A stretch of 64,000 nt of DNA, taken from contig NC_088797.1 of the NCBI RefSeq assembly GCF_011386835.1, forward strand, positions 34,286,001 through 34,350,000. Direction: 5' to 3'. Of the stretch, positions 7,830 to 51,000 are shown in pieces (positions within the stretch are counted from its first letter, which is position 1; every line of letters begins with the position of its first letter). The notes beneath the pieces were generated by a model. It was not told the origin of the DNA. It searched no databases and saw only the letters and a list, made by a program, of their open reading frames with translations. The stretch comes from Chrysemys picta bellii (taxonomy: Eukaryota). Position numbers and translations under genes: made by a program.

Positions 7830-8590
7830 CTAGGAAGTAGTGACTCGGAAAGACAGGGATAATCAGCTGACTAGGAGCTCCTAGTGTAGTGCTTTAGCCA
7901 AAAGGGTAATGTGATCCTTGGCTGTATGAACAGGGGAATCAGGGCCGGCACAACCCATTAGGCGACCTAGGCAGTCGCCTAGGGTGCTACAATTTGGGGG
8001 GTGGCGACCGCAGCGGTATTTCAGTGGTGGGCAACATTGCGGGGCGGCACCTTCCACCGCCTAGGGCGGCAGAAAAGCTGGCGGCGCTCCTGAGGAGAAT
8101 CATGTCAGAAAAGAGGCTTTATTCCCTCTGCAGCTGGCACTGGTGCAGCCACTGCTGGAATACTGTGTCCAGTTCTGGTGTCCACAATTCAAGAAGCATG
8201 TGAATAAGCTGGAGCGGGTTTGGAGAAGAACCACACGAATGATTAAAGGATTAGAAAGCCTGCCTTGTAGTGACAGACTCACAGAGCTCAATGTTTTCAA
8301 TTAAAGTGGTTAGGAGGTGACTTGGTCAGTCTAGAAATGCTGACATTGGGAATGAAAATTTCATAGATGGCTTTTCAATCTGGCAGACAAAGATCTAACA
8401 AGATCCACTAGCTGGAAGTTGAAACTAGACAAATTCAGACTAGAACTAAAATGCGGATTCAACAGGAGGGTCATTAACCATTGGAACAAGTTATTCAGGT
8501 CTGGGGTGGATTCTCCATCACTGGAAATCTTTGGCCAAGTTTGCAAAGCTCTTCGGCTCAACTTGATAGCATTTCTGTGTGGAACATGAT
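7830..8590 (+). mobile_element. Degenerate CR1 LINE 3' fragment
   Basis: CR1 ORF2 C-terminal remnants (CTGGAATACTGTGTCCAGTTCTGG, AATGGCTGGAAGTTGAAACTAGACAAATTCAGACT-like) with stops and frameshifts. Confidence 0.8.
7940..8092. mobile_element. hAT-type MITE nested in CR1
   Basis: Ends CAGGGCCGGC...GCTCCTG; 8-bp TSD AGGGGAAT/AGGAGAAT (7/8 match). Confidence 0.7.
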
Positions 8591-11195: not shown

Positions 11196-14100
11196 TCAGC
11201 TGTTACACTTCTTGGCCACTATGAGAACGGCCGAAGGCACCAAACCTGTTGGGGCAGGAGACAGGCTGAAGCCAGGAACCGAGTGCATATGGGTTGTGAG
11301 GGGAGCAGGTTTGATCCCTGAGAGTGGGAGCGATTTCAGCACAGGGGTCTGAGCTGGAAGGGCCCTGGGTGTTCTGTGGTTTGCATCCTCCCCCGAGAGC
11401 CTACAGGGCCGCAGCCTACCCTGCCCAAGTGAGGACAACAGGGACAGAGCTGGCTCTTGCAGTGGACTCTCTGCTTACAGCTCGGGCTCCTGTCCCCAGC
11501 ACCAGCCAGCAGCACCACCCCACAAGCAGACTCCATGCCCTCCCTTCTCTGATGGGGGCCCCGAAGGAACAGCTGGTGGTCCTGCAGTCATGAGTCCCCA
11601 GCCCAGATCTGTTCTCAAAGGACTCCCCGCTGTTGCTTAGTGGATAGAGTAGTGGGGTCTGGGAGTCAGGACTCCTGGTTTTATTCCCCAGCTCTGGGAC
11701 GGGAGTGGGATCTAGTGGGTCAGAGCAGGGCACCTGGGAGCCAGAACTCTTGGTTCTATTCCCCAGCTCTGCTGCTAACCGTGCCCTCAAACCAGTCACT
11801 TTGCCTGCCCCTCCCCCCCAGGCTTACCTAGCTCCTGCAAGGGCTTCTCCATGTCCTCGTCAGTGAAGATGCGGCGGGGAAAACTGGTGAGGAGGTGGAA
11901 GGGCTCCCCGCCATCCTTGCGGTTCAACTCTATGTACAGCCGCACGGCTGCCAGCTGCTCCTTGGCCTTGAAGGTCTGCGTGAGCGACGTCCCGTCCAGC
12001 AGTCTCACCTGGACGGAGGGCAAGAGGGGCTGAGTGCAGGCCCCATGCCACAGTGGGGCAGCATGCTGGGAGGGCCAGTCCCCCTGCGTTAAGAGGAGAG
12101 CTGCCTGTGTTCTCCTTGTCTTGCAACTCTGGGTGTTATCTCAGAGACAGAGGGCTTCCTCCAGAGCTGCAGCAGCAAGCCAGATCAGGCCAATATCCCA
12201 GTGACTGCCTGGGACCCCCACCACCCTTCCCAGCAAGACCTGCTGTCTGCACCCACCCAGAACCCACAGCAGGGGATGATGGGGGGTAGACTGGCATGTG
12301 TGTAACGAGCAGATGGACGAAGCACAAGAGTCTGTGGGGCTGCCCCCTACCCGGGTACCTGTATTCGGCACTGGTCATACTCTCTCTTCGTGGGCGGTTC
12401 CTGGCTGGGGGATGAGGGCACCGGTGTCTCCTGCGCTGACTCGGCTGGGGCCTGGGAGCTGCTGCCACCTCCAAACTGGATGGGAAAGGTACACAGAGTG
12501 GGACAGGCACTAAGATGCAAATGGGTTCCCCTTCCAGCCCAGGCTTCCCTAGGGACCCCACCCACCCACTCCCTAGCACTCACACAGCGCCCCCCCCCAC
12601 CACCACCACCACCCATACCCAGCAGGCACAGGACAAAGCCACACCCAGGGCATCTCCCTCCCTCCATATAGGGAACTGAGCATGGGATCTCACATGGTGA
12701 ATGGGACCCACCACAGCCCCACCCCCTCATCAGCTCTTCCCCCTACAGCCTCCTTCCACACACACACACCCCACAACCTCCTTGCACCTCCCTCCCCCAG
12801 CTTAAGGAACAGCAGTGGCAGGAGCCACCATGGGGGGCCCGGATCCCACCCAGCCACGGCTGCTTACCCACCTTCTTGACTCGCTCTGCCTTGTCCCGCT
12901 CAATCTTCTCACGCACCCGCTGCCTGCAAGGAGAACAGGCCCAGTTAGAGGTAGCAGCATGGCAGAGGGCGTTTCTGCTGCAACGTCACGGCAAGGGCAA
13001 GTTCCATATCTACATCCACTCCTCCCCCTTTCCCCAATGCACCCCATCCCACTGCCCACCACTCCCTCCACCCATGCACCTACTCCCTCAGTCCCCCACG
13101 CATCCCCATCCCACTCTCCCCGGGCTCTCACTTGGCCAGCTTCTCCTCCATCTTCTCCCTGCGCCTCTCCTCTGCCATCTTCTTCATCTCGTCCTCCTGC
13201 AGCTTCTGGCGGATCATGGAGAGCTCCTGACCCTGCTTGCGCCGCTGCTTCTCCCGCTCAATAGTCTCCCGCTTCTCCCGCTCCTCCCTCTCCCGCTGCT
13301 TCTGTGCGATCAGCTCCATCATCCTGCGGGAGGGACAGGAGTGGGCACCACCTTCCACAGCCCCTGCTTCCCACAGGACCCACAATCCCCCTTGCTCCAA
13401 GAGCTACGCTTCCCAGCATGCCATTCAGCTGGCATCCCAGGGGGACAGGTCTCTCCCTGACAGCCAGGAAATCAGGGAGGTTGAGGGGGTCCTTCCTACC
13501 GCTTGGTCTGTTCCCTCTTCTCCTCTTCAGTCAGGGGGTGCTTGTCATCTCCCTCCGCCGAGCCCTCCTCCACGAGATCTGTAGGGAAAAGCCTCCATTA
13601 TCCTCTGCTCAGAGGCGAGCACCTCCTGCTTCCCACACGGGGTACACAGGTAATGAGCAAAGCACTGGGGCATCAGGGTGGGACCAGGATCCTTCAGAGC
13701 CCCCGTCACTCCAGGGCCTACCCCACATGGATGCGGGGGGGACCACAAGTGTGTGAGCCTGGACCGCAGCAGGGCTCCCAACCCGCCCCTCCTTCAGGCA
13801 AAGCCCACCCCTGAGTCAGTGGGATCCCAGCGCAGGTGGAGGGGGTCGCTCAAGGAAGGAACAGCCAAGAAGCAGGCAAGATACTGGTGCATATGAGCCA
13901 CGGCTCAACCTAGAGGATCCCACAAGTCAGGGTGAGCAGCTTGCCCCCCCTCCACCCAGCGCAGGCAACTCCCCAGGGCTGTTCAAACCTGCTCTGGCTT
14001 CCACGGTCTCGGGGGTGCTTCCCTCGGGTGGCTCCTCCGTGCCCAAGACATGGCCCTGGGGAGGCACGTACGGCTCATCCACGTCAGGGTCATTCTCATG

Positions 14101-16375
14101 CTCCATGAGCCTTTTGAGGAGAGAGAAAGAACAAGCATCAGCAAGGAGAAGGCAGAGTCACAAAGGATGGAAACGCAGACAGATCTAGGGGGAGGGGGGG
14201 CTCCAACACACCAGTCCATGGCCTGCTCGATGCCTTGGTTCCCCGTCAGCGCCAGCGCCTTCTCTCTAAAAGAAACAAAGACAGCCATGGCTGAGTTCCA
14301 TGCAGGAGCTGCACAGCTCTATTACTGCCCCATTCCCACAGCAGCATCGTACCCATGAAATGCTTCATAGACCAGAGACAGATGGACAGCTCAATGGGGT
14401 GACCCAAACCGCCACTGTCCAGGCCCTGAGAACAAATCTGGGTCTCCCCCTCTCCGGCCAATTGACAGAACATTACCCCCAACCTGGAATAGACACCACA
14501 GCCACCAGTGTAACATCAATCCGCGAGCCAGGGATGAGGGGGACTCAGCAGGAAGCACAGAGGGGCCCGTGCCAGGCTGTATAACTGAAGTGATAATAAC
14601 TCATGCTGGTGGAGGCTCTGGAAGGACTAGAATACTGTCTGCTTCAGGGCTGAGCCAATCCTTAGATATTGGGGGCTAAGATGAGGCCTTCATGGGGCAC
14701 GTTGTCCTACAGCTGCTTACTCCTTTGGGTGCAGAGGCACAAATAGCTCCCTTCTCTTCCCCCCTTACCCCCCCAGCACTGGCCCCTCAAAACCCTCCTA
14801 CTGCCTAGGAAGGCCTACCCAAGAGCACGGAGGTGATTTCCCTTCTGCTCATGGCCTTGGTGAGATCAAGACTGGAATCCTGGGTGCTACCTTTGAAATT
14901 TGGTGTTGAGCCATTGAAGAGGGTGAGGAGAAGAGCCTCAAAAACAATTTGAGGGCTGAAGAAAACGCCTGACGGTGAGAGACTGAAAGAGCTCAATCTG
15001 TTTAGTTCATCAAAAAAGAAGACAGAGGTGATCTGACTAGAGCATACGTAGTGGGGAAAAGAGCAGGCACTGAAGGACTCTTTAATGTAACAGAGACAGG
15101 GAGAACAAGAACCAACGGCTGGAAGCTGGTGCCAGACACATTCCAATGAGAAACAATGCACGTTTTTTCCCAGGGAGGGTGATTGACCATTGGAACAAGC
15201 TCCACAGTGCAGGGGTGGAGTCTCCATCTCCAGCCCAGGCTCACTGCCCTTCTGGAAGATGTGTTAGTGAAACACAAGTGATCAGGCTCAATTCAGGGGG
15301 AACTGGGAGACATTATCTGGCCTGTGCTATACCACAGGGCAGACTAGTTGATCTAATGGTCCCTTCTGGCTTTACCCTCTATAACAGCTTCTAGTAATCC
15401 TCTGAAGCACCCTGGGAGCCAGGGCGAGAAGGACCCTGGTTCTGCTCCAGTTGGTCCATTGCAAGGGAACTGACGCTGCTGGCCCCTACATCCAGCTTTG
15501 ATACATGTAGCAGATTTGATTTCAAACAGATCCTGCTGTTCACACTCACTGGCTGTGTTCACTGGCCGGTCCCCCAGTGCTGTTCATGAGGGCGTGCCCA
15601 AGCTGCTGGGGTTGTGAATTCAAGTTAAAGAACATCAAGCTGGCCCCAGCCCCTGCTTTGATTTGGTATTACCAAGGGGGTGCAGCACAGGCATCATTAC
15701 ACAGTGTCTCTGACATGTGACACAGCCAGTCTCCAGCCTCGTCCCAGGGGAGCATTGTATAAATAAATAAATATATGGAGATATATTTATCTCATAGAAC
15801 TGGAAGGGACCCTGAAAGGTCATCGAGTCCAGCCCCCTGCCTTCACTAGTAGGACCAAGTACTGATTTTTGCCCCACATCCTTAAGTAGCCCCCTCAAGG
15901 ATTGAACTCACAACCTTGGGTTTAACAAGCCAATACTCAAACCACTGAGCTATCCCTCTGCCCAGTAAGCATTCCTTGTTTAGTCTGAAGAACCCGGGGC
16001 GGGGCTGGGCAGCGGCATCATCCCTGTTGTTCTGGTGGGGAAATTGAGGCAAAGGGACAGGACTCCCAGTCCCCATCCTCTAACCCACTAGACCCCACTC
16101 TCCTCCCAGCACTGGGGATAGAATCCAGGAGTCCTGCTCTCAGCACTAGATTTTCCCACATTGCACCAGATCCCGCCGTGCTGCCGTTCTACAGCCATAG
16201 CCCATGACCCCCAGTCACTGGTAGGGAGCATCCCGACCTGGTCAAGATGCAGTGGCAGCTAAAGCAGCCTGTGGACGGCTGGGAGGGCAATGAGGGGATG
16301 GAAATAGGGGCATACATACGCTCTGTTCTGGGAGAAGCCCATCTCAATGAGACTCTCCAGTGCTGTGCACTCCAT
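11196..16375 (-). CDS. UBXN1: UBX domain-containing protein 1, 300 aa
   Basis: Coding exons 16375-16320, 14265-14212, 14110-13989, 13578-13500, 13323-13132, 12923-12872, 12475-12359, 12008-11828 and 11245-11196 (903 nt, all phases consistent). UBA ([14 protein letters not shown]), coiled coil and UBX (FPRR...LVPSAVLIV). 5'UTR exon donor near 17246; AATAAA(-) at 10946-10951. Confidence 0.97.
14800..15395 (+). mobile_element. Degenerate CR1 3' fragment in a UBXN1 intron
   Basis: CR1 ORF2 end and 3'UTR-like text (GGACTAGATGATCTAATGGTCCCTTCTGGC-like). Confidence 0.75.
15758..15963 (-). mobile_element. Tortoise-type tRNA-derived SINE
   Basis: Closely similar to the copy at 9894-10094. Confidence 0.9.
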
Positions 16376-17246
16376 GATGTGCTGCTCTGGACCGAGCTCT
16401 CTCTCTGCAAAGGGAAGAGAGGGAGAAGACGTGTTACAGGGCAGCTCCAAGAGGATCGGTGGCTGCTCAAGGACAGAGTGGGACAGCTGGAGAACAGGAT
16501 GTAATATGTGGCACATCCACTACTTGAGAGGTTCCTTGGGCCTGGACCCCACATCTCTCCCAGTGCCAGGAATAGAACCCAGCAGTCCTGGCTCCCAGCT
16601 CCTATTAGATCCCACAGACCCCTTGGGCTCACATGATTTATGCTGCTATAGTGGGATTCACCCCAGGACTAAGCAGCATCACACAAGAGGGTTACAGGTA
16701 GGCCAGGGGGCAAAACCCATGGCAGACAAGGGCAAAGGGGCCACTCAGGCTGTGCCCAGGTGCAGAGCATTGTCCCTGAAGAGGTGTCCAGGAGCCAGAG
16801 AGGATGGGGTGTGATGTCATTTAGCCCTCCTCTACCCACTGGGTTAAAGGTCCCCTTAGACCCTGCAACCAATGACTGGATACACCCAGCTCACAGCTAC
16901 ATTCAGGCCCTGGCACCGGGGTCCACTCTCCTCCACTCCCCACCTCTGCATGTCTAGTGGCACCCCCTCAGGCGGAGACTCCGTCTCATCCCTTCTTTAC
17001 AACCCCCAGGCAGAGCCCCCCCACACCTCCCACAAGCCCCTGTATCTCCCCAGAGCCCCCCTCCAAGCCCCTGTATCCCCCTGTAGAGCCCCCCAAGCCC
17101 CAGTATCTCCCCACAGAGCCCCCCACATCCCCCTGCAGAGCCCCCCCAAACCCCTGTATCTCCCCACGGAGTCTCCCCTCGCGGGGGGCGGGCTAGGGGA
17201 TCTGGGGGGGCAGGTCCCGGCGGGGGATGGTATCCTGAGGACTCAC

Positions 17247-22249: not shown

Positions 22250-24487
22250 AAAACCATTTAAGAACACCTTACTAATGCACAAAAAGCTTCAATCCGAGAA
22301 CTGAGGAAGAAGACTGTGCTGGTTAAAAAATTGACCTGGTTTAGAGGGGAAGAGAGGGCAGAGATTAAATATATATAGAGAGAGAGAAACACATGGAAAA
22401 AAGGGGACGTTGATAGTAATGAATATATATCAGAAGTTAGGCATTGCAGAAAATTGATAAGGGAAGTAAACAGAAACAAGGAGAAATCTATGATCAGCAG
22501 AGTTAAGGACAATAAGAAGGAGTTTTTAAAATATATTAGGCACAAATAGAATCCTGACAGTGGTATTGGTCCATTACTAGATGGAAATGGTAGAACGATC
22601 AATAATAATGCAGAAAAGGCAGAAGCATTAAATCAATATTTCTGTTTTGTATTTGGGGAAAAACATGATATAGTCTCATCATATGGTAATAATAACCATT
22701 CCACTCATATCTTTCCATTCAGCTAGTATCTCTAGAGGATGTTAAACGGCAACTACTGAAGTGGGTCATTTTAAAATCAGCAGGTCCAGTTGTCTTGCAT
22801 CCACAAGTTTGAAAAGAGCTGGCTGACAAGCTTTCTGGACTGTTACTGTTGGTTTTCAATAAGTCTTGGAGCATTAGGGACGTTCTGGAAGACTGCAAAA
22901 AGCTAACATTGGGCCATTTTTTGAAAGGGTAAACGGGATGACCTGGGTAATTATAGTCCTGTCAGCCTGACATTGATCCCAGGCAAGATAACAGAGCAGT
23001 TGATTCATGGCTCATTTAAGAATTAAACGAGGGTAATGTAATGCGGATCAGCAGGTTTTATGGAAAATAGGCATATTTATGGCAAACTAACTTGATATCT
23101 TTTTTGATGAAATTACAAGTTTGGTTGATAAAGGTAATAGTGTTGACGTAATATACTCAGACTTCTGTAAGGTGTTCGACTTGGTACTGCCCAACATTTT
23201 TATTAAAAAACTAGACTGATATAAAATTAACATGTCCCACATTAAATGGATTTAAAAACTGGCTTAACTGATAGGTCTCAAAATGTAACTGTAAACAGGG
23301 AATCATCATCAAGCATGTGCGTTTCCAGTGGGTCCCCCAAGGATCAGTTCTGGGCCCTATATGCTATTGAACTTCCTCATTAATTATACCTCTACCCCAA
23401 TATAACGCTGTCCTTGGGAGCCAAAAAATCTTACCGCGTTATAGGTGAAACCGCGTTATATTGAACTTGCTTTGATCCGCCGGAGTGCACAGCCCCACCC
23501 CCCCGGAGCGCTGCTTTACCGCTTTATATCCGAATTCGTGTTATATCGGTTCGCGTTGTATCGGGGTAGAGATGTACATGGAAGAAACATAAAATCGTCA
23601 ATGATAAAATTTGCAGATGACACAAAAATTGGGGGAGTGGTAAGTAGTGAAGAGGACAGGTCTCTGATTCAGAGCAAATCTAGATCTCTTGGTAAGCTGG
23701 GTGCAAGCAAAGAATATATCTTTTCATATAACTAAATGTAAAGGTATACAGCTAGGAATAAAGAAAGTAGGCCATACAAACAATGGGGGACTATCCTGGG
23801 AAGTAGTGACTCTGAAAAAAGATTTGTGGGTTGTGGTGGATAATCAGCTGAACATGAGTCCACAGTGCACCTCTGTGGCCCAAAAGGCTAATCCAATCCT
23901 GGAATGCATAAACAGGAATCTCAACTAGAGGTACAGAAGATTTCTGCATTTAGCACTGGTGTGACTGCTGCTGGAATACTGTCCCCTGTTCTGGTGCCCA
24001 CAATTCAAGAATGATGTTGATAAATTGGAGGATTCAGATATGAGCAATGAGAATGATTAAAGAATTAGAAAACATGCCTTATAGTGGTAGAATCAAAGAG
24101 CACAATCTATTTAGTTTAACAAAGAGAAGGTTAAGGTGTGACTTGATAATAGTTTGTAAGTACCTACATGGGAAACAAATATTTAATAATGGGCTCTTTG
24201 ATCTACAAGAGAAAGGTAGAACGCGATCCAATGGCTGGAAATTGAAGCTAGACACATTCAGACTGAAAATAAGGCGTAAAGTTTTGACAGTGAGCGTAAT
24301 TAACCATTGGAACAATTTACCAAGGGTCCTGGTGGATTCTCCATCACTGACAATTTTTAATTCTAGATAGGATATTTTTCTAACACATCTCCTCTAGTTC
24401 AATCAGGAATTAATGCAGGGAGGCCTGCATTATACAGGAAGTCAGATGATCATAGTGATTGATCCCTTCTGGCCTTGAAATCTATGA
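22250..24487 (+). mobile_element. Degenerate CR1 LINE (ORF2 remnant through the 3' end)
   Basis: RT remnants ([11 protein letters not shown] at about 23600), many stops and frameshifts, 3' end ATCTATGA. Confidence 0.9.
23387..23574. mobile_element. Tc1/mariner-type MITE nested in CR1
   Basis: TIRs TACCTCTACCCCAATATAACG...CGTTGTATCGGGGTAGAGATG, flanked by TA on both sides. Confidence 0.8.
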
Positions 24488-24839: not shown

Positions 24840-24973
24840 AACTCCTGGCGACAAGTGCAGAGCAGTGGGGGCAGGGACTGGAGCCCAGAGCCCAGATAGG
24901 GAGAAGGCTGCTGGGGCAGGGACAAGGCTGCCAGGAGAGTGGGTTGGGGTAGGGACAGGAGTCCAGAGGCTAG

Positions 24974-26633
24974 ATGGGGACAAGAGCCCATATGGGGGCA
25001 GGCACTGTTGGGGTAGGGATGGGGCCGCCCAGGCTGCCGATGCGGACAGGGCACCAGGGCTGGCTGGCAGGGCGAGGGCTGCGAGGGCACCAGGGCTGGC
25101 TAACTGCCCAGCTCTGTCTTGCCATCGGCCTGTTCCTGGCAGAGGTGGTGGCCAGTCGGGTCACAGGCTCCCTGCTGGCTCTCTCCTGCTCACTCCAGAC
25201 GCTGGGGATGGTGCTAGCGCTGGGGGTGGCTCTGCTGGATGGCCAGCTGGCCTGCGGAGCACACCCCGATTGCAGGAACACCTTCGGATGGGTGCGGGCC
25301 CGGGTGGCAGGGACCCTAGTGTGTGGCGTGTTCCTGACAGCACTGTGCCTGGCCCTGCTGCCCAGGGCACTGCACCGGGCAGGGCACCCCCAGGTGACAG
25401 AGCGGCCCCTGGCACTGGTGGGAGTCGGGGCTGCTGGGCTCCTCATTCATCTTGCCAGGGTGAGGCTGGATAGGCAGCACCATCCCGCTCGAGCAAAGAG
25501 TCCCCACAGCGGCCATGCCAGCACCAGCAGAGAGGGCGCAGCCACAGGCAGATATGCCCAGGAGACACAAGGTGAGTCCTGCTGGGGGGGAGGGGGCGTA
25601 CCGGGCTAGGCCTGTCTCTCAGCTAGAGGGGAGGGCTGAGCTGGGGGGTGGTACCAGGCCAGGCCTGCTGTGTCAGCGTGGGTTGAGATGTTTGGGGAGC
25701 GGTGTGGGGGGAAGGGGTACTGGGCCACTCCTTCAGCTTTGGGTGTCGGAGTTTGCTTAAGTAAGAATTGAGCCTGCCCTATGACTCCCATAGTCTTTGC
25801 TCCTTTGCCCCCCCCCGACCTTGCCCAGTGACCCTTGCCCCCAAGCTGTAGCATGACATGCTGCCCCCATACCATTTTCACACCTCTTCCTTCCCCCCTG
25901 CACAGACCTGCTGGGGAACAGGCAGCCTTGGCTAGAGGACGGGTGCTTGCCTGCAGAGGAGTCTGGTGCCTGGCTGGCTCTCTGCCTTCGCCTCCTGGCT
26001 GCCTCCCTGGGCCCTGCCACCGTGCTGCTATATTCACTTGCCTTCCACCTGCTGTGGCCCCCATGTGTGGAGCAAGTGGCCTGCCTGCCCCCCTGCACTG
26101 GGATGCCATGCTGGCCCCTGGGCGGCCCTGCGCCAGCCCTGGCAGAGCTGGGGCCCTGCTGGCTGCTGTACCTGGACCCTGGGCTGTGTGTGGTTGTGGT
26201 GCTGGCTTTGATCCTTTTGGGTGCCCCTTCCCTGCGGGGCTCTGCCTTGGTGCTGCTGCAGGCTGTGCCCGACCATCTGGACCTATGGCGACTTGAGTCG
26301 CATCTGAGGAGCACGGAGGGGGTGGCAGCCCTGCATGAGCTCCATGTCTGGCAGCTGGACAGTTCCTACAGCCTGGTGGCCACGGCCCATGTCTGGTGCC
26401 TTGACACTGCCTCCTACAAGGCTGTGGCCAGGAGGATCCAGCAGGTGTTCTGGGAGCATGGGATCCACGCAGCCACAGTGCAGCCCGAGTTCGGTGCACT
26501 TCAGGAACCGTGCTGCATGGCAGCAGGTGGGGGTGATGGCTGCATGGGGGGGGGTGAGGCCCCCAGGAAGAGGCACCCGTCACTCCCATTCTCCAGCCCC
26601 ACGGTGATCCTGGAGTACGAGACCACAGTGTGA
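24974..26633 (+). CDS. SLC30A1/ZnT1-like cation diffusion facilitator paralog, about 441 aa from the first ATG, with a degenerate transport site
   Basis: Exons 24974-25571 (AAG|GTGAGT, phase 1) and 25906-26633, open throughout. ZnT1-type motifs: EVVASRVTGSL, RNTFGWVRA, a Cys-rich loop ending GPCWLLYLDP, SALVLLQAVP, HELHVWQL, ATAH and HGIHAATVQPEF. AATAAA at 27107-27112. Several in-frame ATGs (24974-25040) make the start uncertain. Confidence 0.9.
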
Positions 26634-27188
26634 GCCATGGGAGCCACCTCTGAACCAGCACTTAAAAGGGACATGTCCTGGAGTGAGCGGGGGCCATGGC
26701 AGCCACTCCCCATGAAGCGTCTGCTCCCCACACTCCTCAGGCAGCTCGGGGAGTATAGAACTGTGCCAGCTCCCCCACCCCTCCGCCATGCCGCTGCTCT
26801 TTGCCTGCCCCAGGCCCATGTGAGATTCCTGGAGGGAGGAGCCGGGGCGTGTAGGGGAGCAGGGGGTGTTGGCAGCCCTGAAGACTGAGAATGAAGTGAG
26901 GAGCAGAAACCGGCCTCCAAGGATCAGCGGCACTATGGAGATTTGGAACCTACCGTGCTGTGAGACAGGGTTGCCCCTGGACTCAGCACTCAGGACAGGC
27001 CATGGCACAGGATGGGGCTCCCCACAGGACTCAGGGTCCCTACAGGATGTGCCGCAGGACGGGGCTGATGTGGGGTCTCTCCTTTTAGAGCACTGCATTC
27101 CCTGTAAATAAAGGGCATGGAGCTGCCTGCCAGGATGTTGCTCTTTATTGCTTGGCGACAGCCACAGGGGTTGGAGCGTCGGGGGGAG

Positions 27189-35395: not shown

Positions 35396-36256
35396 CTATA
35401 GCTGCTCCTCGCCCCTGTATAAGCCATTGGCCACCCCACTTGGCCCCACCTCCCCATCCAGGATGTTGTCCTGGGAGCCGTGGAACTGCCGTCTCCTCGA
35501 GCGCAGGGCAAAGTGCCAGGTCAGCGCGGACACCACCACCAGGCCGAACATGGCCGCCAGTCCTGCTGCCACATATGCGTAGGGAAGCTGGGGGGCCAGG
35601 GTGCGGATGGTGCGGCACGGTCCATGGGCCCGACTCCCATCATCAGTGGGGCTGGCACCAGCCTGGTTGGCTGCCATGACACATACCAGGTAGGAGGTGC
35701 TGGGGTGCAGCCCCCCAAGCACTGCCATCCGGAAAGTGCTGTTGAAGATGGGGCCAGCAATGGTGTGGCCCCCATCAGCCTGGTATATCAGTCGGTACTC
35801 CCACACTGTGGAGGAGGGGGCACACCAATGCAGGCTGGCCCCAGACTCAGTGACATGCACTGCCCTCAGCTGGGGTGGCTCCGGGGGCACATCTGGGCCA
35901 GTCACCCCAGGGCACAGGCAACCGGTATCCTTGCTCAACTCTGCACAGGCTGTCTGCAGGTGGCGGCAATGGTGGTAGACACAAGGCTGATGGGATGGGT
36001 TCTGGGAGCCAGGCATCTGTGGGGTATCCGGGGTGGAGGGGTCCTCATAGCTGTAATAGTCTGTCCCCAAGTCGTGCTGGGGGGTGGAGGAGGCAAAGGG
36101 GCTGCTCTCCTGGGCATGGAGCCAGGGCCAGTGGCTCTGGCCCTTCGGGGGAAGGGGTAGGGAGCCTCCCATGCTCGTCGGCGCCCCCTCTGGGCACAGG
36201 ATCAGGAGGCAAGCAGCCATGAGGACTGGAGCCGAGAGTCCCAGGAGGATGGTCAT
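35396..36256 (-). CDS. LRRN4CL: LRRN4 C-terminal-like protein (signal peptide, Cys motif, FN3 domain, TM), 286 aa
   Basis: Single coding exon (acceptor at 36262-36263). PCVYHHCRHLQTAC..CLCPG..PPEPP..LHWCAP motifs, a TM segment and a basic stop-transfer stretch. Synteny between UBXN1 and BSCL2. Confidence 0.93.
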   Translation of the reverse strand: MTILLGLSAPVLMAACLLILCPEGAPTSMGGSLPLPPKGQSHWPWLHAQESSPFASSTPQHDLGTDYYSYEDPSTPDTPQMPGSQNPSHQPCVYHHCRHLQTACAELSKDTGCLCPGVTGPDVPPEPPQLRAVHVTESGASLHWCAPSSTVWEYRLIYQADGGHTIAGPIFNSTFRMAVLGGLHPSTSYLVCVMAANQAGASPTDDGSRAHGPCRTIRTLAPQLPYAYVAAGLAAMFGLVVVSALTWHFALRSRRRQFHGSQDNILDGEVGPSGVANGLYRGEEQL

Positions 36257-45000: not shown

Positions 45001-48000
45001 CCCGGGGCCACACGCTGCCCCAGATCCACTGCAGGTAGCTGAAGAGGACGATGACGCTGAGGAAGGTGAAGTTACTGGCCACGCCCAGGATGGCCGAGGT
45101 CACTGGGAAATTATAGAGCAGGTACCTGGGGCAAGAGGGGGTGGAGCCTGAGCATTAGGGTGCTGCAGCCTGGATCCAGTCTTCCCCCTCCCAGACACAG
45201 GCCCCTCCGCCAGTCCATGGGCCCTCCCCCTAACCCACATGCCCCCCCCCCCAACCCACATGCCCCCCAGCATCATCCGTGGGGGGGGGGGAGGGACAAC
45301 AGATTACAGGGATCAGCTTTGTGGGGTTGCTGAATTGAGTGCACTGCAGTCTCCTAGCACTAGGAACTGCCCCCAGTGCTGCACAGTCCCATCCCTCCCG
45401 CCCTCTCTCCCCACCAGTGGTACCCCCCCCCAATCCTCACCGCAGGCCCGTGAAGTGGGCATGGATCCGCAGCTGTGCCCCATAGATCTGGATCCGCTTG
45501 GTCTGGATTTCTATCACGGCTCCAACAGTTGGGACATACTGGGACACACACAACAGGCAGGCTCAGAGCTGCAGGTGGGGCTATCGCAAGTTCCCCAACC
45601 CTGACAGCAGGGCATGCACCGGCCTCAAGCCCCGCTGCCCAACTCAGACAGCCAGGGTACGTGACCCTCCCCACCAACCCAGACAGAGCTGTAGTCACCC
45701 ACACCCCCAGCCACCAACTCAGATAGCCGAGCATATGCCTGCCCTCTGCTCTCCCTCAGCCCAACCCAGGCAGTGGGGCACATGTGCCCCCTCCATGCTC
45801 CCAACCCACACAGGAAGGGGAGCCATTACTTGCGGGGGAAAAGGGAGGGTCTCTGCACCAGGCACCAGCTCCTGTGCTGGGGGTGGGGAGCAGAGGCTCT
45901 GGCCAGCCCAGGCACGGCCAGCCAGCCCAGGCAGCTAATGCAGAAGAGCCCCCCTCACCGAGTCCTCCCTGTAGTCCGAGTACAGCTCCACCTCGACCAT
46001 CTGCTTCTGCTCAGCAAAGCCCAAGAAGAAGAGCCCAGCAAAGACCAGGGTGTCCAGGGTCTGGAGCAGGCCTGAGCGGTAATGTAGCATGGTCTGGGGG
46101 GAGAAGAGCCAGTGTTAGCATTGAACCCAGCCCCCCCCCCCCCCCCCCCAACATCTCCCACCAGCTCCCCGGGGCCATTAGGGGCACTGCCAGCAGGGAG
46201 CTGCTTCTTGCCCAAGGATCTCCCAGGGTTTCCAAGAGGAGTCCAGGGCTTCAGTCCCACTGCAGAGAGAGGAAGGGAATTGCCAAGAGAGTGCAGGGGC
46301 AGAGCACAGAATAGAACCCCAGTGTCCTGGCTCCCAGCCCTCCCTGCCTAATCCACGGAACCCCCACTCCCTCCTAGAGCCAGGGATAGAACCCAGGAGT
46401 CCTGACTGCCAGCTCTCTTTGCTCTACTACCCCAAGAGACACTGTAGCCCCTGGCTAAGGGTGGAATAGCTGCCATGGGGAGCCCTGCCTCAGCCTCCCT
46501 GGAGCCTCTACCTGAGGCAGCAAGGCCAGAAATGTAGGTGTGTGGGGTGCTGAAATGGTGGAGTGGATGGCTCAGAGAGTGGGCTGAGATGGGCCCCAGA
46601 CTCACCGATCTGGCTATGGAGGAGACGATGCGCCCACCCTTGGTGTAGCAGGACATCACCACCATGAACATGCCCAGCTCCTGGTTCACAGGCGACTCAG
46701 GCAGCTCCAGTTCCAGGGAGATGCGGTAAGGCTGCCCATACATCAGCACCTACAGGACAGCAGGGGGCATCAGAGGGAGGGGGTGCTGCTTGCCCCTCCT
46801 GAACCACCCTAGAGGCCCCACAGCCTCCCAAGACCCTACAGCTGGGGGGAAAGTGCATCAGAGATGGAGCGGGGAGCCTGCCCCCCCCAACTCTCATAGA
46901 GCCTCTTGCTGTGGGAAGAGTACATCAGATAGAGTAGGGAACCTGCCCCCAAACCCTTCCAGAGCCCCCTGCTGCAGGGAGAGAGCATCAGAGATGGAGC
47001 GGGCAGCCTCTCCCCACAGCCTCTCAGAGCCCCCTGCTATGGGGAAAATGCATCAGAGATGGAGCGGAGAGACTACTAACTGTAATCTGTAACCTATCAT
47101 TTAAATCAGCTTCTGTACCAAATGACTGGAGGATATCTAATGTGATACCAATTTTTAAAAAGGGCTCCAGAGGTGATCCTGGCAATTACAGGCCCCCTGA
47201 CTTCAGTACCAGGCAAACTGGTTGAAATGATAGTAAAGAACAAAACTGACAGATACATAGATGAACATAATTTGTTGGGGAAGAGTCAACATGGTTTTTG
47301 TGAAGGGAAATCATGCCTCACCAATCTACTAGAATTCTTTGAGGGGGGGTCAACAAGTATGTGGACAAGGGGGATCCAGTGGATATACTTACTTAGTGTG
47401 ACATCCTATACCTTGGGGGAGAATCCTGGTAATCCCCATATTCCTCATTTATATATAATTTTGATATTGCATATAGAGCATGCCATGTAAGGTATCAGGG
47501 TAAAGGTTATGATCTGCTGAATGTCACTGTTCTATCTAAATATGTATATCATTAGTGCATATGAAGTTATGAGATTGTGTTTTATGGTTGTCAGTAAAAC
47601 ATGCTGTAAATTGGGGAATCGGCCAGATATTAGGTCCCTAGAGACAACAGCAAGGAAAGTAACCAACACCCAGGCAGGTGTCAAACAACAATCAACAACC
47701 ATTGTCCAGCAAGGAAGCTACAATGCAATGACTCACCCGCATAAGGTCACACCAGGGGAATTGATCAACCTTGCCTGGGGATTCAACAATGCCCACCAGA
47801 TGTGCCTGAACTTGTGTTCTCCAAGCACATCACGGACTAAGGGTATAGAACAGAACACAGTGGCCACATAGATTCATAGATTCTAGGACTGGAAGGGACC
47901 TCGAAAGGTCATCGAGTCCAGTCCCCTGCCCGCATGGCAGGACCAAATACTGTCTAGACCATCCCTGATAGACATTTATCTAACCTACTCTTAAATATCT

Positions 48001-51000
48001 CCAGAGATGGAGATTCCACAACCTCCCTAGGCAATTTATTCCAGTGTTTAACCACCCTGACAGTTAGGAACTTTTTCCTAATGTCCAACCTAGACCTCCC
48101 TTGCTGCAGTTTAAACCCATTGCTTCTGGTTCTATCCTTAGAGGCTAAGGTGAACAAGTTTTCTCCCTCCTCCTTATGACACCCTTTTAAATACCTGAAA
48201 ACTGCTATCATGTCCCCTCTCAGTCTTCTCTTTTCCAAACTAAACAAACCCAATTCTTTCAGCCTTCCTTCATAGGTCATGTTCTCAAGACCTTTAATCA
48301 TTCTTGTTGCTCTTCTCTGGACCCTTTCCAATTTCTCCACATCTTTTTTAAAATGCGGTGCCCAGAACTGGACACAATACTCCAGCTGAGGCCTAACCAG
48401 AGCAGAGTAGAGCGGAAGAATGACTTCTCGTGTCTTGCTCACAACACACCTGTTAATACATCCCAAGATCATGTTTGCTTTTTTTGCAACAGCATCACAC
48501 TGTTGACTCACATTTAGCTTGTGGTCCACTATAACCCCTAGATCCCTTTCTGCTGTACTCCTTCCTAGACAGCCTCTTCCCATTCTGTATGTGTGAAACT
48601 GATTGTTTCTTCCTAAGTGGAGCACTTTGCATTTGTCTTTGTTAAACTTCATCCTGTTTACCTCCGACCATATCTCCAATTTGTCCAGATCATTTTGAAT
48701 TATGACCCTGTCCTCCAAAGCAGTTGCAATCCCTCCCAGTTTGGTATCATCCGCAAACTTAATAAGCGTACTTTCTATGCCAATATCTAAGTCGTTGATG
48801 AAGATATTGAACAGAGCCGGTCCCAAAACAGACCCCTGCGGTACCCCACTCGTTACGCCTTTCCAGCAGGATTGGGAACCATTAATAACAACTCTCTGAG
48901 TACGGTTATCCAGCCAGTTATGCACCCACCTTATAGTAGCCCCATCTAAATTGTATTTGCCTAGTTTATCGATAAGAATATCATGCGAGACTGTATCAAA
49001 TGCCTTACTAAAGTCTAGGTATACCACATCCACAGCTTCACCCTTATCCACAAGGCTCGTTATCCTATCAAAGAAAGCTATCAGATTGGTTTGACATGAT
49101 TTGTTCTTCACAAATCCATGCTGGCTGTTCCCTATCACCTTACCACCTTCCAAGTGTTTGCAGATGATTTCCTTAATTACTTGCTCCATTATCTTCCCTG
49201 GCACAGAAGTTAAACTAACTGGTCTGTAGTTTCCTGGGTTGTTTTTATTTCCCTTTTTATAGATGGGCACTATATTTGCCCTTTTCCAGTCTTCTGGAAT
49301 CTCTCCCGTCTCCCATGATTTTCCAAAGATAATAGCTAGAGGCTCAGATACCTCCTCTATTAGCTCCTTGAGTATTCTAGGATGCATTTCATCAGGCCCT
49401 GGTTACTTGCAGGCATCTAACTTTTCTAAGTGATTTTTAACTTGTTCTTTTTTTATTTTATCTGCTAAACCTACCCCCTTCCCATTAGCATTCACTATGT
49501 TAGGCATTCCTTCAGACTTCTCGGTGAAGACCGAAACAAAGAAGTCATTAAGCATCTCTGCCATTTCCAAGTTTCCTGTTACTGTTTCTCCCTCTTCACT
49601 AAGCAGTGGGCCTACCCTGTCTTTGGTCTTCCTCTTGCTTCTAATGTACTGATAAAAAGTCTTCTTGTTTCCTTTTATTCCCATAGCTAGTTTGAGCTCA
49701 TTTTGTGCCTTTGCCTTTCTAATCTTGCCCCTGCATTCCTGTGTTGTTTGCCTATATTCATCCTTTATAATCTGTCCTAGTTTCCATTTTTTATATGACT
49801 CCTTTTTATTTTTTAGATCGTGCAAGATCTCGTGGTTAAGCCAAGGTGGTCTTTTGCCACATTTTCTATCTTTCCTAACCAGCGGAATAGCTTGCTTTTG
49901 GGCCCTTAATAGTGTCCCTTTGAAAAACTGCCAACTCTCCTCAGTTGTTTTTCCCCTCAGTCTTGATTCCCATGGGACCTTACCTATCAGCTCTCTGAGC
50001 TTACCAAAATCTGCCTTCCTGAAATCCATTGTCTCTATTTTGCTGTTCTCCCTTCTACCCTTCCTTAGAATTGCAAACTCTATGATTTCATGATCACTTT
50101 CTCCCAGGCTGCCTTCTACTTTCAAATTCTCAACGAGTTCCTCCCTATTTGTTAAAATCAAGTCTAGAACAGCTTCCCCCCTAGTAGCTTTTTCAACCTT
50201 CTGAAATAAAAAGTTGTCTCCAATGCAGTCCAAGAATTTGTTGGATAGTTTGTGCCCCGCTGTGTTATTTTCCCAACATATATCCGGATAGTTGAAGTCC
50301 CCCATCACCACCACCAAAGGACCACATGCTGGGCCTTTCTCCTGCCCCCGCCTATGCTGCAAGCAACAAGGGCACTCGAAGGTTTCAGTCTTCAAACGTG
50401 AGACTGGCCCAAAGTTTAAGGGACAAACCTGTATATTATGAACTGCAATATCCAGTGGGGTGAGAAAAACTGCTTAGTCTAGATGTTACCCAATCTAATA
50501 GGGTTGAGAGTTTAGACTGCATACTTACATTTTATTTCGGTAACTAACTCTGACTTTTTGTCTATCACTTAAAAATCTATCTTTTGTAGTCAATAAACTT
50601 GTTTTACTGTTTATCTTTATCAGTGAGTTTGCCTGAAATGTTTGATAGATCTGATCAGGTTTGCAAAGGCTGGTGTGTATCCACTTTCCATTGATGAAGT
50701 GGTGAACCAAGTAATAAACCTGCACTGCTTATCTTGAACAGTGCAAGACGGTATATTCCTGAGATGCCAGGCTGGGAGCTGGGGGGATTTGGCTGGTGCC
50801 TTTTTCTGTGATTCATGCGTGGTTCTGGGAGCATTCATGCAATCTGGCTGGGTGTGGGGCTCCACATCCAGTTGGGCTGAGTGAGAACAGCTCCTAGAGG
50901 GGTTTGCTGCTTGTTGTCTCTCACAATGCTTTGCTAGTGACAGACAACCCAGGCTGGAGAGTTAAGAGGGCACAGCAGTCCCAGACTCTACCCCGGGGAT

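What the first reader, a model, noticed from the sequence alone, without database searches (positions are those of the whole stretch)
24974..26633. Intact ZnT1 paralog with all four transmembrane Zn ligands substituted: a candidate pseudo-transporter
Seen: TM2 reads LSCSLQTLGMVLAL where ZnT1 has LSDSFHMLSDVLAL (H to Q at 25196, D to M at 25208). TM5 reads CLRLLAASLGP where ZnT1 has FLHVLGDALGS (H to R at 25989, D to A at 26001). The His-rich loop is reduced. Retained are the open frame, the two-exon layout, the ZnT1-type Cys-rich loop, the cytosolic HELHVW/ATAH/HGIH residues and a class-I PDZ-type C-terminus (ETTV). Knowledge: the HxxxD/HxxxD site A is required for CDF transport. CDFs act as dimers, and ZnT1 has transport-independent roles (Ca-channel regulation, scaffolding). 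Inference: a Zn-sensing scaffold, a heterodimeric modulator of ZnT1, or a carrier of a non-Zn substrate.
Basis: partly seen in the sequence, partly recalled or inferred. Interest (0 to 1): 0.85.

Follow-up and report, generated by a model that had tools for sequence, protein, structure and literature searches.

The report
Reptile ZnT1-like protein without zinc site
This painted-turtle gene is an old, expressed and selectively maintained copy of the zinc exporter ZnT1 that has lost every residue of the zinc-transport site but kept the parts that make the dimer, so it most likely works as a non-transporting partner or scaffold, not as a zinc pump.

Summary
Window 24974-26633 (+) holds a two-exon gene with a GT..AG phase-1 intron. 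It encodes 441 aa, identical to the RefSeq model "SLC30A1-like" of Chrysemys picta bellii. Its best solved relative is human ZnT1. All four transport-site ligands are replaced: H43→Q75, D47→M79, H251→R228, D255→A232.

It is not a pseudogene. The frame is intact in seven turtle CDSs. Overall dN/dS is 0.40; it is 0.1-0.25 in TM1-3, TM6, the C-terminal domain and the last eight residues, and about 1 in the N-terminus and the shrunken His-loop. Precisely spliced transcript contigs occur in two related species.

Orthologs at the same locus (next to a UBA-UBX gene) occur in turtles and squamates. All lack D47, H251 and D255, and canonical ZnT1 coexists with them. Trees and an AU test reject a recent sauropsid duplication of ZnT1; the nearest kin are "SLC30A1-like" proteins of cartilaginous fishes.

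TM5 is the most diverged segment, while the predicted dimer-interface columns are preferentially kept. The best reading is a non-transporting protomer analogous to ZnT6, probably pairing with ZnT1; this step is inferred. No paper on this gene was found.

The parts
24974..25571 (+). Coding exon 1 (residues 1-199 plus the first base of codon 200): N-terminus, TM1-TM4 and the start of the cytosolic loop
   Evidence: ORF and translation. Pfam Cation_efflux 47.1 bits against a cut-off of 26.6. ZnT1 match E 3e-25. The spliced product equals P0153.
25572..25905 (+). Intron, 334 nt, GT..AG, phase 1
   Evidence: Splice sites read in the sequence. Contigs of runs X16 and X30 skip exactly these 334 bases, and none of the four runs covers the intron.
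25906..26633 (+). Coding exon 2 (residues 200-441 plus the TGA stop): rest of the loop, TM5, Cys-rich extracellular loop, TM6, C-terminal domain and tail
   Evidence: Translation. ZnT1 match E 1e-44 and ZnT1 CTD crystal chains E 2.6e-21. AF2 model with TM5, TM6 and an alpha-beta-beta-alpha-beta CTD.
25196..25210 (+). TM2 half of the former site A: Q75 (25196-98, = H43) and M79 (25208-10, = D47)
   Evidence: HMMER alignment to human ZnT1. Q is invariant in 10 turtles, with M in 8 and L in 2. Synonymous changes inside the motif among turtles.
25989..26003 (+). TM5 half of the former site A: R228 (25989-91, = H251) and A232 (26001-03, = D255)
   Evidence: HMMER alignment. R or Q, and A or T, in turtles; G/A/R/T/D and A/P/S/V in squamates. 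TM5 is only 18% identical to turtle ZnT1.
25481..25955 (+). Remnant of the His-rich cytosolic loop (residues 170-216, interrupted by the intron)
   Evidence: 52 aa with 4 His against 90-113 aa with 6-14 His in ZnT1. dN/dS 1.11. pLDDT below 50.
26055..26162 (+). ZnT1-type cysteine-rich extracellular loop between TM5 and TM6 (residues 250-285), shortened
   Evidence: The five Cys align with those of ZnT1. A ZnT1 structure paper describes this loop as unique to ZnT1 orthologs (PMC11549101). It is only weakly constrained, with dN/dS 0.72-0.99.
26259..26495 (+). Cytosolic C-terminal domain (residues 318-396), including HELHVW, ATAH and HGIH..QPEF
   Evidence: dN/dS 0.19. Foldseek matches to the ZnT1 CTD crystals with TM-score 0.90-0.93. 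Part of the predicted dimer interface.
26619..26630 (+). C-terminal E-T-T-V, which has the form of a class I PDZ ligand
   Evidence: The last eight residues have dN/dS 0.10. E[YF]ET[TSC]V ends occur in turtles, squamates and shark 'like' proteins.
24852..24973 (+). At least part of the 5' UTR
   Evidence: Transcript contigs start at 24852 (X16) and 24874 (X15).
26634..27093 (+). 3' UTR, minimum extent
   Evidence: Contigs run on to 27093 (X25), 27034 (X30) and 27002 (X16).

Best explanation
The gene encodes a functional ZnT1-family (SLC30) membrane protein that no longer moves zinc through the canonical site. It is an old paralog of ZnT1, kept in turtles and squamates beside the normal ZnT1.

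What is kept: the six-helix bundle, the ZnT1-type dimer contacts (TM3, the cytosolic end of TM6, the CTD beta-sheet), the Cys-rich outer loop and a PDZ-type C-terminus.

What is lost or remodelled: the ion pathway. All four HD/HD ligands are replaced, TM5 is 18% identical to ZnT1, and the His-loop is halved and evolves neutrally.

The most likely mode of action is as a non-transporting protomer that pairs with a transport-competent partner, most plausibly ZnT1. In such a heterodimer it would alter the partner's activity, surface residence or PDZ-dependent placement, as ZnT6 does for ZnT5.

Shown here: gene structure, loss of ligands, purifying selection, splicing, orthology within reptiles, and an origin older than sauropsids. 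Inferred: absence of transport, dimerisation, the identity of the partner, and any effect on it.
For: - Ligand loss is fixed. The 10 turtles have Q, M/L, R/Q, A/T. All 21 squamates lack D47, H251 and D255. According to the ZnT1 structures, Zn is held by D47/H251/D255 with or without H43 (PMC11549101).
- The gene is intact and constrained. Seven turtle CDSs, each two exons with GT..AG, give dN/dS 0.40 (p 9e-14). By segment: TM1 0.11, TM2 0.23, TM3 0.25, TM6 0.24, CTD 0.19, last 8 aa 0.10, against N-terminus 1.27 and His-loop 1.11.
- It is spliced. Contigs of two related species skip the intron exactly and carry no stop codons.
- The canonical ZnT1 coexists in turtles and squamates.
- The fold is retained: six TM helices plus the CTD, and the top Foldseek hits are ZnT1.
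- The interface is retained. Among ZnT1-invariant columns, 27 of 31 predicted interface positions keep the ZnT1 residue against 60 of 142 elsewhere (odds ratio 9.2, p 6e-6). Squamates show the same pattern (p 1e-4).
- The predicted heterodimer of turtle ZnT1 and this protein scores ipSAE 0.72 against a best control of 0.00. The three runs agree in at least 72% of contacts and the partner's pLDDT is at least 67. This mark was reached by 51 of 78 solved complexes and 2 of 108 mismatched pairs.
- Precedent: ZnT6 lacks two site ligands and acts as an auxiliary protomer of ZnT5 (PMC7949119).
Against: - No experiment shows loss of transport, dimerisation or any partner.
- The complex prediction may simply recall the solved ZnT1 homodimer. 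By the tool's own statement it cannot tell which family member binds, so a homodimer fits equally well.
- The interface set comes from that prediction, and such columns are intrinsically conserved in ZnT1 as well (0.96 against 0.90). The enrichment is therefore partly circular.
- Overall dN/dS of 0.40 and a protein rate 2-4 times that of ZnT1 show relaxed constraint.
- Co-expression with ZnT1, tissue and subcellular location are unknown; the run identities are coded.
- The RNA status of the runs is the tool's guess, although an exact GT..AG skip is hard to explain otherwise.
Confidence: 0.4

Rival explanations
1. A non-transporting homodimer that acts on its own as a membrane scaffold or regulator of other proteins. 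The model is the transport-independent roles reported for ZnT1: binding the L-type Ca-channel beta subunit, Raf-1 and EVER proteins. It would be anchored through its PDZ-type C-terminus and would not pair with ZnT1.
For: - The C-terminal EYETTV is under the strongest constraint (dN/dS 0.10) and is shared with shark 'like' proteins.
- The CTD is strongly constrained (0.19).
- CDFs are homodimers by default, and the conserved interface fits a homodimer just as well.
- The ZnT1 interactions with the LTCC beta subunit, Raf-1 and EVER are reviewed in PMC7949119.
Against: - No partner is identified.
- Strong constraint on TM1-3 and TM6 is not obviously needed for a cytosolic scaffold.
- Interface columns stay ZnT1-identical after a very old split although the rest of the protein diverged 2-4 times faster. 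This is slightly easier to explain if the partner is the slowly evolving ZnT1.
Confidence: 0.3
2. The protein is still a carrier or a leak pathway, but for something other than Zn or by a different route, for example protons, monovalent cations or a soft metal through Met/Cys/Gln.
For: - The TM helices are under purifying selection.
- Clade-specific polar residues are fixed in all 31 reptile sequences: T76, T114 and H159. C72 occurs in 26 of 31.
- In-frame deletions next to the TM2 site turn human ZnT1 into a Na+ influx pathway (PMC10554340), so remodelled ZnT1 cores can conduct other ions.
Against: - The four site positions are not conserved between turtles and squamates. M79 is L in softshell and pig-nosed turtles, and R228 is Q in three turtles. 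No common new ligand set is visible.
- TM5 is the least conserved helix (18% identity to ZnT1).
- The TM2-TM3 loop has no conserved metal ligands.
Confidence: 0.15
3. A zinc sensor: the protein does not transport zinc but binds cytosolic Zn at the retained C-terminal-domain sites and signals occupancy.
For: In Chrysemys the ZnT1 CTD ligands H370, E371, H373, H387, H410, H413 and E420 are all present. These residues form the CTD zinc sites of ZnT1 (PMC12290082; PMC11549101).
Against: - H370 is R in 4 of 10 turtles; E420 is A in Chelydra; H408 is W in all turtles.
- In squamates H370 is never His, H373 is often R/Y/F/C/N, and H387 is Q/K/E in geckos.
- The cysteine-bearing C-terminal extension that completes these sites in ZnT1 is shortened.
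- The His-loop is degenerate and evolves neutrally.
Confidence: 0.08
4. A decaying duplicate with no function: a young or slowly dying pseudogene that happens to keep its frame.
For: It evolves 2-4 times faster than ZnT1. The loops evolve neutrally. No orthologs were seen in birds, crocodilians, mammals or amphibians.
Against: - The two-exon frames are intact in seven turtles spanning Cryptodira and Pleurodira, and there are full-length models in about 25 squamates.
- dN/dS is significantly below 1 (p 9e-14) and falls to 0.1-0.25 in the folded parts.
- Spliced transcripts exist.
- The AU test rejects a recent origin.
Confidence: 0.03

Closest known systems
SLC30A1 / ZnT1 (human structures 8XM6, 8XMA, 8ZSB, 8J2G; turtle ortholog P0276)
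   Same: - Best sequence and fold match.
- Six TM helices plus an alpha-beta-beta-alpha-beta CTD.
- The ZnT1-specific five-Cys extracellular loop.
- Two coding exons with a phase-1 intron in the TM4-TM5 loop.
- A class I PDZ-type C-terminus (ESSL in ZnT1, ETTV here).
- Predicted dimer-interface residues are largely identical.
   Different: - All four site-A ligands are replaced.
- TM5 is 18% identical to ZnT1.
- The His-rich loop is halved with few His.
- The extracellular loop is shorter and lacks the N-glycosylation sequon seen in ZnT1.
- The C-terminal extension is much shorter.
- It evolves 2-4 times faster.
- It lies at another locus, between a UBA-UBX gene and LRRN4CL.
- It falls outside the gnathostome ZnT1 clade.
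SLC30A6 / ZnT6 (auxiliary protomer of the ZnT5-ZnT6 heterodimer; yeast Zrg17 with Msc2)
   Same: A CDF protein whose transport-site ligands are replaced by non-coordinating residues, which is maintained by selection and is thought to act only as a partner in a dimer (PMC7949119).
   Different: - It belongs to a different ZnT subgroup: ZnT6 is subgroup IV, while this protein sits with ZnT1/ZnT10 in subgroup I (PMC6147782). The loss is therefore independent.
- ZnT6 lacks two ligands; this protein lacks four.
- ZnT6 works in the early secretory pathway. The location of this protein is unknown.
- No heterodimer has been demonstrated here.
'SLC30A1-like' proteins of cartilaginous fishes (Heptranchias P0016, Scyliorhinus P0216, Narcine P0026, Mobula P0198)
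   Same: - Sister group of the reptile clade (support 94/93 and 96/85*).
- D47 is lost in all four.
- ..E[YC]ET[TSA]V C-termini in three of the four (Heptranchias, Scyliorhinus, Narcine); the Mobula model ends differently.
- About 36-41% identical to the turtle protein.
   Different: - They keep H43 and the CTD ligands. Some keep H251 and/or D255 (Mobula H/D, Narcine R/D, Scyliorhinus H/G), so part of the site may still work.
- Shared synteny could not be shown.
SLC30A10 / ZnT10
   Same: It belongs to the same ZnT subgroup as ZnT1 and is a natural example of a changed site A (N in place of H43, from my knowledge).
   Different: It is a much weaker match (69.7 and 49.2 bits against 155.8 and 92.8 for ZnT1). 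It lacks the Cys-rich loop according to PMC11549101. It is an active Mn transporter.

Membership tests
Cation diffusion facilitator / SLC30 superfamily | Cation_efflux transmembrane domain (Pfam PF01545) | tested here: met
   Exon 1 scores 47.1 bits against a cut-off of 26.6, E 3e-12. PF01545 is precomputed for P0153.
Cation diffusion facilitator / SLC30 superfamily | Six TM helices followed by a cytosolic alpha-beta-beta-alpha-beta domain | tested here: met
   The AF2 model has helices 31-64, 67-95, 105-137, 146-169, 217-249 and 286-317, followed by H-E-E-H-E. The CTD matches the ZnT1 CTD crystals with TM-score 0.90-0.93. Pfam ZT_dimer alone is below its cut-off (16.8 against 26.7 bits).
Cation diffusion facilitator / SLC30 superfamily | Tetrahedral transport site A on TM2 and TM5 (HxxxD / HxxxD in ZnTs) | tested here: not met
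   The positions read Q75, M79, R228 and A232. The protein is thus a member by descent and fold, but not by the functional signature.
SLC30A1 (ZnT1) orthologs | Placement inside the gnathostome ZnT1 clade | tested here: not met
   ML trees place it outside that clade. The AU test rejects a clade of reptile-like plus sauropsid ZnT1 (delta lnL 41.4, p 0.00065). Bona fide ZnT1 is present in the same species.
SLC30A1 (ZnT1) orthologs | Cysteine-rich extracellular loop between TM5 and TM6 | tested here: met
   Five aligned Cys. PMC11549101 describes this feature as restricted to ZnT1 orthologs. The loop is shorter here and single Cys are lost in Natator and Pelodiscus.
SLC30A1 (ZnT1) orthologs | Long His-rich cytosolic loop | tested here: not met
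   46-66 aa with 0-4 His against 90-113 aa with 6-14 His. dN/dS 1.11.
Non-transporting auxiliary CDF protomers (ZnT6 type) | Transport-site ligands replaced while the gene stays under purifying selection | tested here: met
Non-transporting auxiliary CDF protomers (ZnT6 type) | Obligate heterodimer with a transport-competent CDF | tested here: inconclusive
   The predicted complex with turtle ZnT1 scores 0.72 against a best control of 0.00. The runs agree in at least 72% of contacts and the partner's pLDDT is at least 67. The mark was reached by 51 of 78 solved complexes and 2 of 108 mismatched pairs. The pass may reflect the solved ZnT1 homodimer and does not tell a heterodimer from a homodimer.
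Non-transporting auxiliary CDF protomers (ZnT6 type) | No metal transport by the protomer itself | not testable with these tools
   This needs a flux or rescue assay.
Non-transporting auxiliary CDF protomers (ZnT6 type) | Descent from the ZnT6/Zrg17 lineage | tested here: not met
   The closest relatives are ZnT1 and then ZnT10. The likeness to ZnT6 is one of mode of action only.

The most novel reading that the evidence does not exclude
Early jawed vertebrates had extra ZnT1-type genes beside ZnT1 and ZnT10. At least two such lineages lost the zinc site independently and survived for hundreds of millions of years as something other than zinc pumps. One is this lineage, in sharks, turtles and squamates. 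The other is 'group B', in shark, coelacanth, lungfish and amphibians. In the boldest version the remodelled TM core is not inert but forms a new conductance or carries another substrate, as disease deletions beside the TM2 site do to human ZnT1. Mammals and birds would then have lost a whole class of ZnT1-derived regulators or channels.
Probability: 0.12. Interest if true: 0.8.

Novelty: new variant of a known kind. Interest (0 to 1): 0.55.

Why it matters
Genome pipelines name this gene 'proton-coupled zinc antiporter SLC30A1-like', which is probably wrong for reptiles because the antiport site is gone. The gene is a natural experiment of more than 200 million years that separates what the ZnT1 scaffold does without transport (dimerisation, CTD contacts, PDZ anchoring) from zinc export. 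That separation is debated for ZnT1's effects on Ca channels and Raf/ERK signalling. It would be a second, independent case of the ZnT6 solution: a dead protomer kept as a partner. Together with 'group B', it also shows that the vertebrate ZnT repertoire is larger outside mammals than the ten-member textbook set. The gene can be tested directly by expression in ZnT1-null cells.

Tried and rejected
- Pseudogene or decay: rejected.
- Recent sauropsid duplicate of ZnT1 with a long branch: rejected by the AU test. The clade was named after the tree had been seen, and long branches are involved.
- Retrocopy: rejected, because the intron is kept in the same loop and phase as in turtle ZnT1.
- ZnT10 affinity: rejected on scores. 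No ZnT10 sequence could be brought into the trees, because none was among the 150 representatives listed.
- A conserved replacement metal site at the old positions or in the TM2-TM3 loop: not found.
- Synteny of the shark 'like' genes with the reptile locus: uninformative. One neighbour is a histone gene and the other two loci came without DNA.
- Naming the upstream UBA-UBX gene through the PDB: only generic UBX hits. 'UBXN1' rests on my memory of the human protein and of its adjacency to LRRN4CL at 11q12.3.
- Literature searches for SLC30A1-like, ZnT1-like, slc30a1b, ZnT11 and slc30a1l: none of the papers listed concerns this vertebrate paralog. Most hits are about plants or insects, TMEM163, or the zebrafish slc30a1a/b genes, and I did not open them to check. 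The Fukunaka 2009 ZnT5-ZnT6 paper is not held, so ZnT6 is cited through the review PMC7949119.
- Earlier scan notes: nothing relevant.
- One script call returned no answer and was repeated.
Full report
**1. What is in the sequence**

The region holds a two-exon gene on the + strand. Exon 1 is 24974-25571. The intron is 25572-25905 (334 nt, GT..AG, phase 1). Exon 2 is 25906-26633 and ends in TGA. The spliced product is 441 aa. It is identical over its full length to P0153, which NCBI names 'proton-coupled zinc antiporter SLC30A1-like [Chrysemys picta bellii]', on record CM062324.1 of GCA_011386835.2. The window is therefore painted-turtle DNA, and the gene model is the public one.

Exon 1 passes the Pfam Cation_efflux threshold. 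Against all PDB sequences both exons hit human SLC30A1 best (E 3e-25 and 1e-44), with SLC30A10 a distant second.

- The five-cysteine extracellular loop of ZnT1 is present.
- The His-loop is shortened and poor in His.
- HELHVW, ATAH and HGIH are present.
- The C-terminus is ETTV.
- Turtle ZnT1 (P0276) shares the layout of two coding exons with a phase-1 intron in the TM4-TM5 loop.

**2. Is it a live gene?**

I fetched the orthologous loci of six further turtles: Mauremys, Natator, Chelydra, Emydura, Pelodiscus and Carettochelys. All have an intact two-exon CDS with a GT..AG intron.

Nei-Gojobori dN/dS is 0.26-0.49 for every pair. Summed over three independent pairs it is 0.40 (p for omega below 1 is 9e-14). 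The constraint is strongly uneven:

| Segment | dN/dS |
|---|---|
| TM1 | 0.11 |
| TM2 | 0.23 |
| TM3 | 0.25 |
| TM6 | 0.24 |
| CTD | 0.19 |
| last eight residues | 0.10 |
| N-terminus | 1.27 |
| His-loop | 1.11 |
| extracellular loop | 0.72 |

The substituted TM2 motif LSCSLQTLGMVLAL is kept through synonymous changes.

Contigs of four small, transcriptome-sized runs cover the exons and UTRs but never the intron. In two of them, from two related species, one contig joins 25571 to 25906 exactly. The differences those contigs carry introduce no stop. The tool labels these runs 'RNA?' as a guess. An exact GT..AG skip is nevertheless best explained by spliced mRNA.

**3. Who else has it**

Word-indexed and exhaustive protein searches find full-length relatives in more than ten turtle species, covering both suborders, and in about 25 squamates. 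All are named SLC30A1-like or zinc transporter 1-like by pipelines. None was listed from birds, crocodilians, mammals or amphibians. Given the sampling of these searches, that is absence of evidence only.

In the turtle the gene lies between a UBA-coiled-coil-UBX gene on the minus strand (exons 11796-16516) and LRRN4CL (35396-36256, minus strand). A gecko ortholog has the same UBA-UBX neighbour. From my own knowledge, UBXN1 and LRRN4CL are adjacent at human 11q12.3 with no ZnT gene between them. This was not tested here.

Canonical ZnT1, with LSDSFHMLSD, FLHVLGDALGS, a long His-loop and ..ESSL, coexists in the same turtles and squamates. The paralog evolves 2-4 times faster than ZnT1 over the same species pairs.

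**4. The ligand table**

| Group | H43 | D47 | H251 | D255 |
|---|---|---|---|---|
| Turtles (10) | Q | M or L | R or Q | A or T |
| Squamates (21) | H (Q in one of the 21, Lerista; Q also in Sceloporus) | G | G/A/R/T/D | A/P/S/V |

No reptile sequence keeps D47, H251 or D255. [quoted passage not shown] 'SLC30A1-like' proteins of sharks and rays have lost D47 but keep H43 and, variably, H251 and D255.

The cytosolic zinc ligands of ZnT1 are H370/H387/E420, H408/H413 and E371/H373 (PMC12290082; PMC11549101). They are complete in Chrysemys apart from H408 (W), but they vary among orthologs:
- H370 is R in four of ten turtles and is never His in squamates.
- H373 and H387 are often replaced in squamates.

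This argues against a conserved Zn-sensing role.

**5. Origin**

ML trees (LG+C20+F+G4 PMSF) give three results:
- The reptile clade has 100/100 support and sits on a long stem of about 1-1.3 changes per site.
- It is sister to the chondrichthyan 'like' proteins (94/93 and 96/85*).
- It lies outside a well-behaved gnathostome ZnT1 clade that follows the species tree.

Forcing the reptile clade together with sauropsid ZnT1 costs 41.4 lnL units (p-AU 0.00065). There are caveats. The hypothesis was framed after the tree had been seen, long branches are involved, ZnT10 could not be included, and shark synteny was uninformative. The retained intron excludes a retrocopy. I read the gene as an old paralog that arose before tetrapods. 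Its site decayed stepwise: D47 was lost first and the rest were lost on the reptile stem.

**6. What is kept and what is lost in the fold**

An AF2 model (mean pLDDT 61.7, but 80-94 in most TM helices) shows six TM helices and the alpha-beta-beta-alpha-beta CTD. Foldseek ranks the human ZnT1 structures first (E about 1e-20). The ZnT1 CTD crystals match with TM-score 0.90-0.93.

Identity to turtle ZnT1 by segment:

| Segment | Identity to turtle ZnT1 |
|---|---|
| TM1 | 44% |
| TM2 | 42% |
| TM3 | 58% |
| TM4 | 54% |
| TM5 | 18% |
| TM6 | 50% |
| CTD | 51% |

A complex prediction of turtle ZnT1 (residues 14-445) with this protein (residues 31-405) scored 0.72 against a best control of 0.00. The runs agree in at least 72% of contacts and the partner's pLDDT is at least 67. 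The mark was reached by 51 of 78 solved complexes and 2 of 108 mismatched pairs. The interface is the ZnT1-type one: TM3 against TM3, the TM6 end and the CTD sheet.

By the tool's own warning this may be memory of the solved ZnT1 homodimer, and it does not say which family member binds. Using that interface set and only the ZnT1-invariant columns, 27 of 31 interface positions keep the ZnT1 residue against 60 of 142 elsewhere (odds ratio 9.2, p 6e-6). The squamate majority shows the same pattern (p 1e-4). Seven of the eight CTD contact residues named in PMC12290082 are unchanged (L377, H387, Y396, T416, Q418, P419, F421; P393 is T). I read this from the alignment. The enrichment is partly circular, because confident interface calls favour conserved columns.

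**7. Mechanism**

The pattern is this. The ion path is remodelled and not re-fixed on a common new ligand set, and the His-loop is neutral. The dimer contacts, the CTD and the PDZ-type end are constrained. This fits a non-transporting protomer.

The family has a precedent. ZnT6 lacks two site ligands and serves as the auxiliary partner of ZnT5, and heterodimers can redirect ZnTs in the cell (PMC7949119). My estimates for the alternatives are:
- A ZnT1 partner: 0.40.
- A self-standing homodimeric scaffold acting through the C-terminus or CTD, like the transport-independent roles reported for ZnT1: 0.30.
- A new substrate or leak pathway: 0.15. This is kept alive by fixed clade-specific polar residues (T76, T114, H159) and by the Na+ leak of human ZnT1 deletion mutants (PMC10554340).
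- A Zn sensor: 0.08.
- Decay: 0.03.

**8. Novelty and score**

The gene is annotated automatically, but none of the papers returned by my searches of the held library concerns it. I judged this from their titles and abstracts; most were not opened. A dead CDF protomer is a known kind (ZnT6). A ZnT1-lineage one that has lost all four ligands, is old, and is retained in reptiles and probably sharks but missing from mammals is a new variant. It is moderately surprising to a specialist and easy to test. The reasons are that a precedent exists and that the Zn-sensor and novel-substrate ideas find little support.

Noticed in passing
Proteins P0022 (Latimeria), P0050 (Pleurodeles), P0033/P0234 (Protopterus), P0051 (Carcharodon), P0024/P0235 (Geotrypetes); not in the window: A second, separate clade of ZnT1-like proteins with a degenerate transport site (100/100 support). 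D47 is I/V/R/Q, H251 is S/I/W and D255 is S/C, while the CTD ligands are mostly kept. The C-termini read ..TN.NV. The clade is present in shark, coelacanth, lungfish and amphibians.
   Followed up: partly
P0008 (Arapaima gigas 'zinc transporter 1-like'), not in the window: This protein falls inside the ray-finned-fish ZnT1a clade but has Q at H43 and A at D255, on a long branch. It looks like another independent partial loss of site A.
   Followed up: no
window 11796-16516 (-): Exons of a UBA, coiled-coil and UBX gene, for example the UBX exon at 11796-12023 and the UBA exon near 16259-16516. It is the upstream neighbour of the ZnT1-like gene in both turtle and gecko. From memory it looks like UBXN1.
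   Followed up: partly
window 35396-36256 (-): A single-exon gene for LRRN4 C-terminal-like protein (fn3 domain, 286 aa). The exact sequence sits in a cluster with other turtle LRRN4CL proteins.
   Followed up: yes
window 47954-50395 (-): Two adjacent ORFs of a LINE element: a 330-aa endonuclease part and a 477-aa reverse transcriptase. They lie in the AT-rich block at 48-52 kb (GC 0.42).
   Followed up: partly
window 24047-24370 (+): A 107-aa ORF that resembles the C-terminal tail of a CR1-type LINE ORF2 (from memory). It lies about 600 bp upstream of the ZnT1-like start codon, in a low-GC stretch. Similar tails occur at 8143-8304 and 8419-8589.
   Followed up: no
window 24974-25063 (+): The first 30 codons evolve at dN/dS 1.27, and other turtles' gene models start at the Met corresponding to residue 7 or 16. 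The true initiation codon may therefore lie downstream of 24974.
   Followed up: no
window 26715, 26793-26801, 26861 (3' UTR): Small indels separate the related species' transcripts from the window: a +GC, an 8-nt deletion and a +1. All lie in the UTR and none in the CDS.
   Followed up: no
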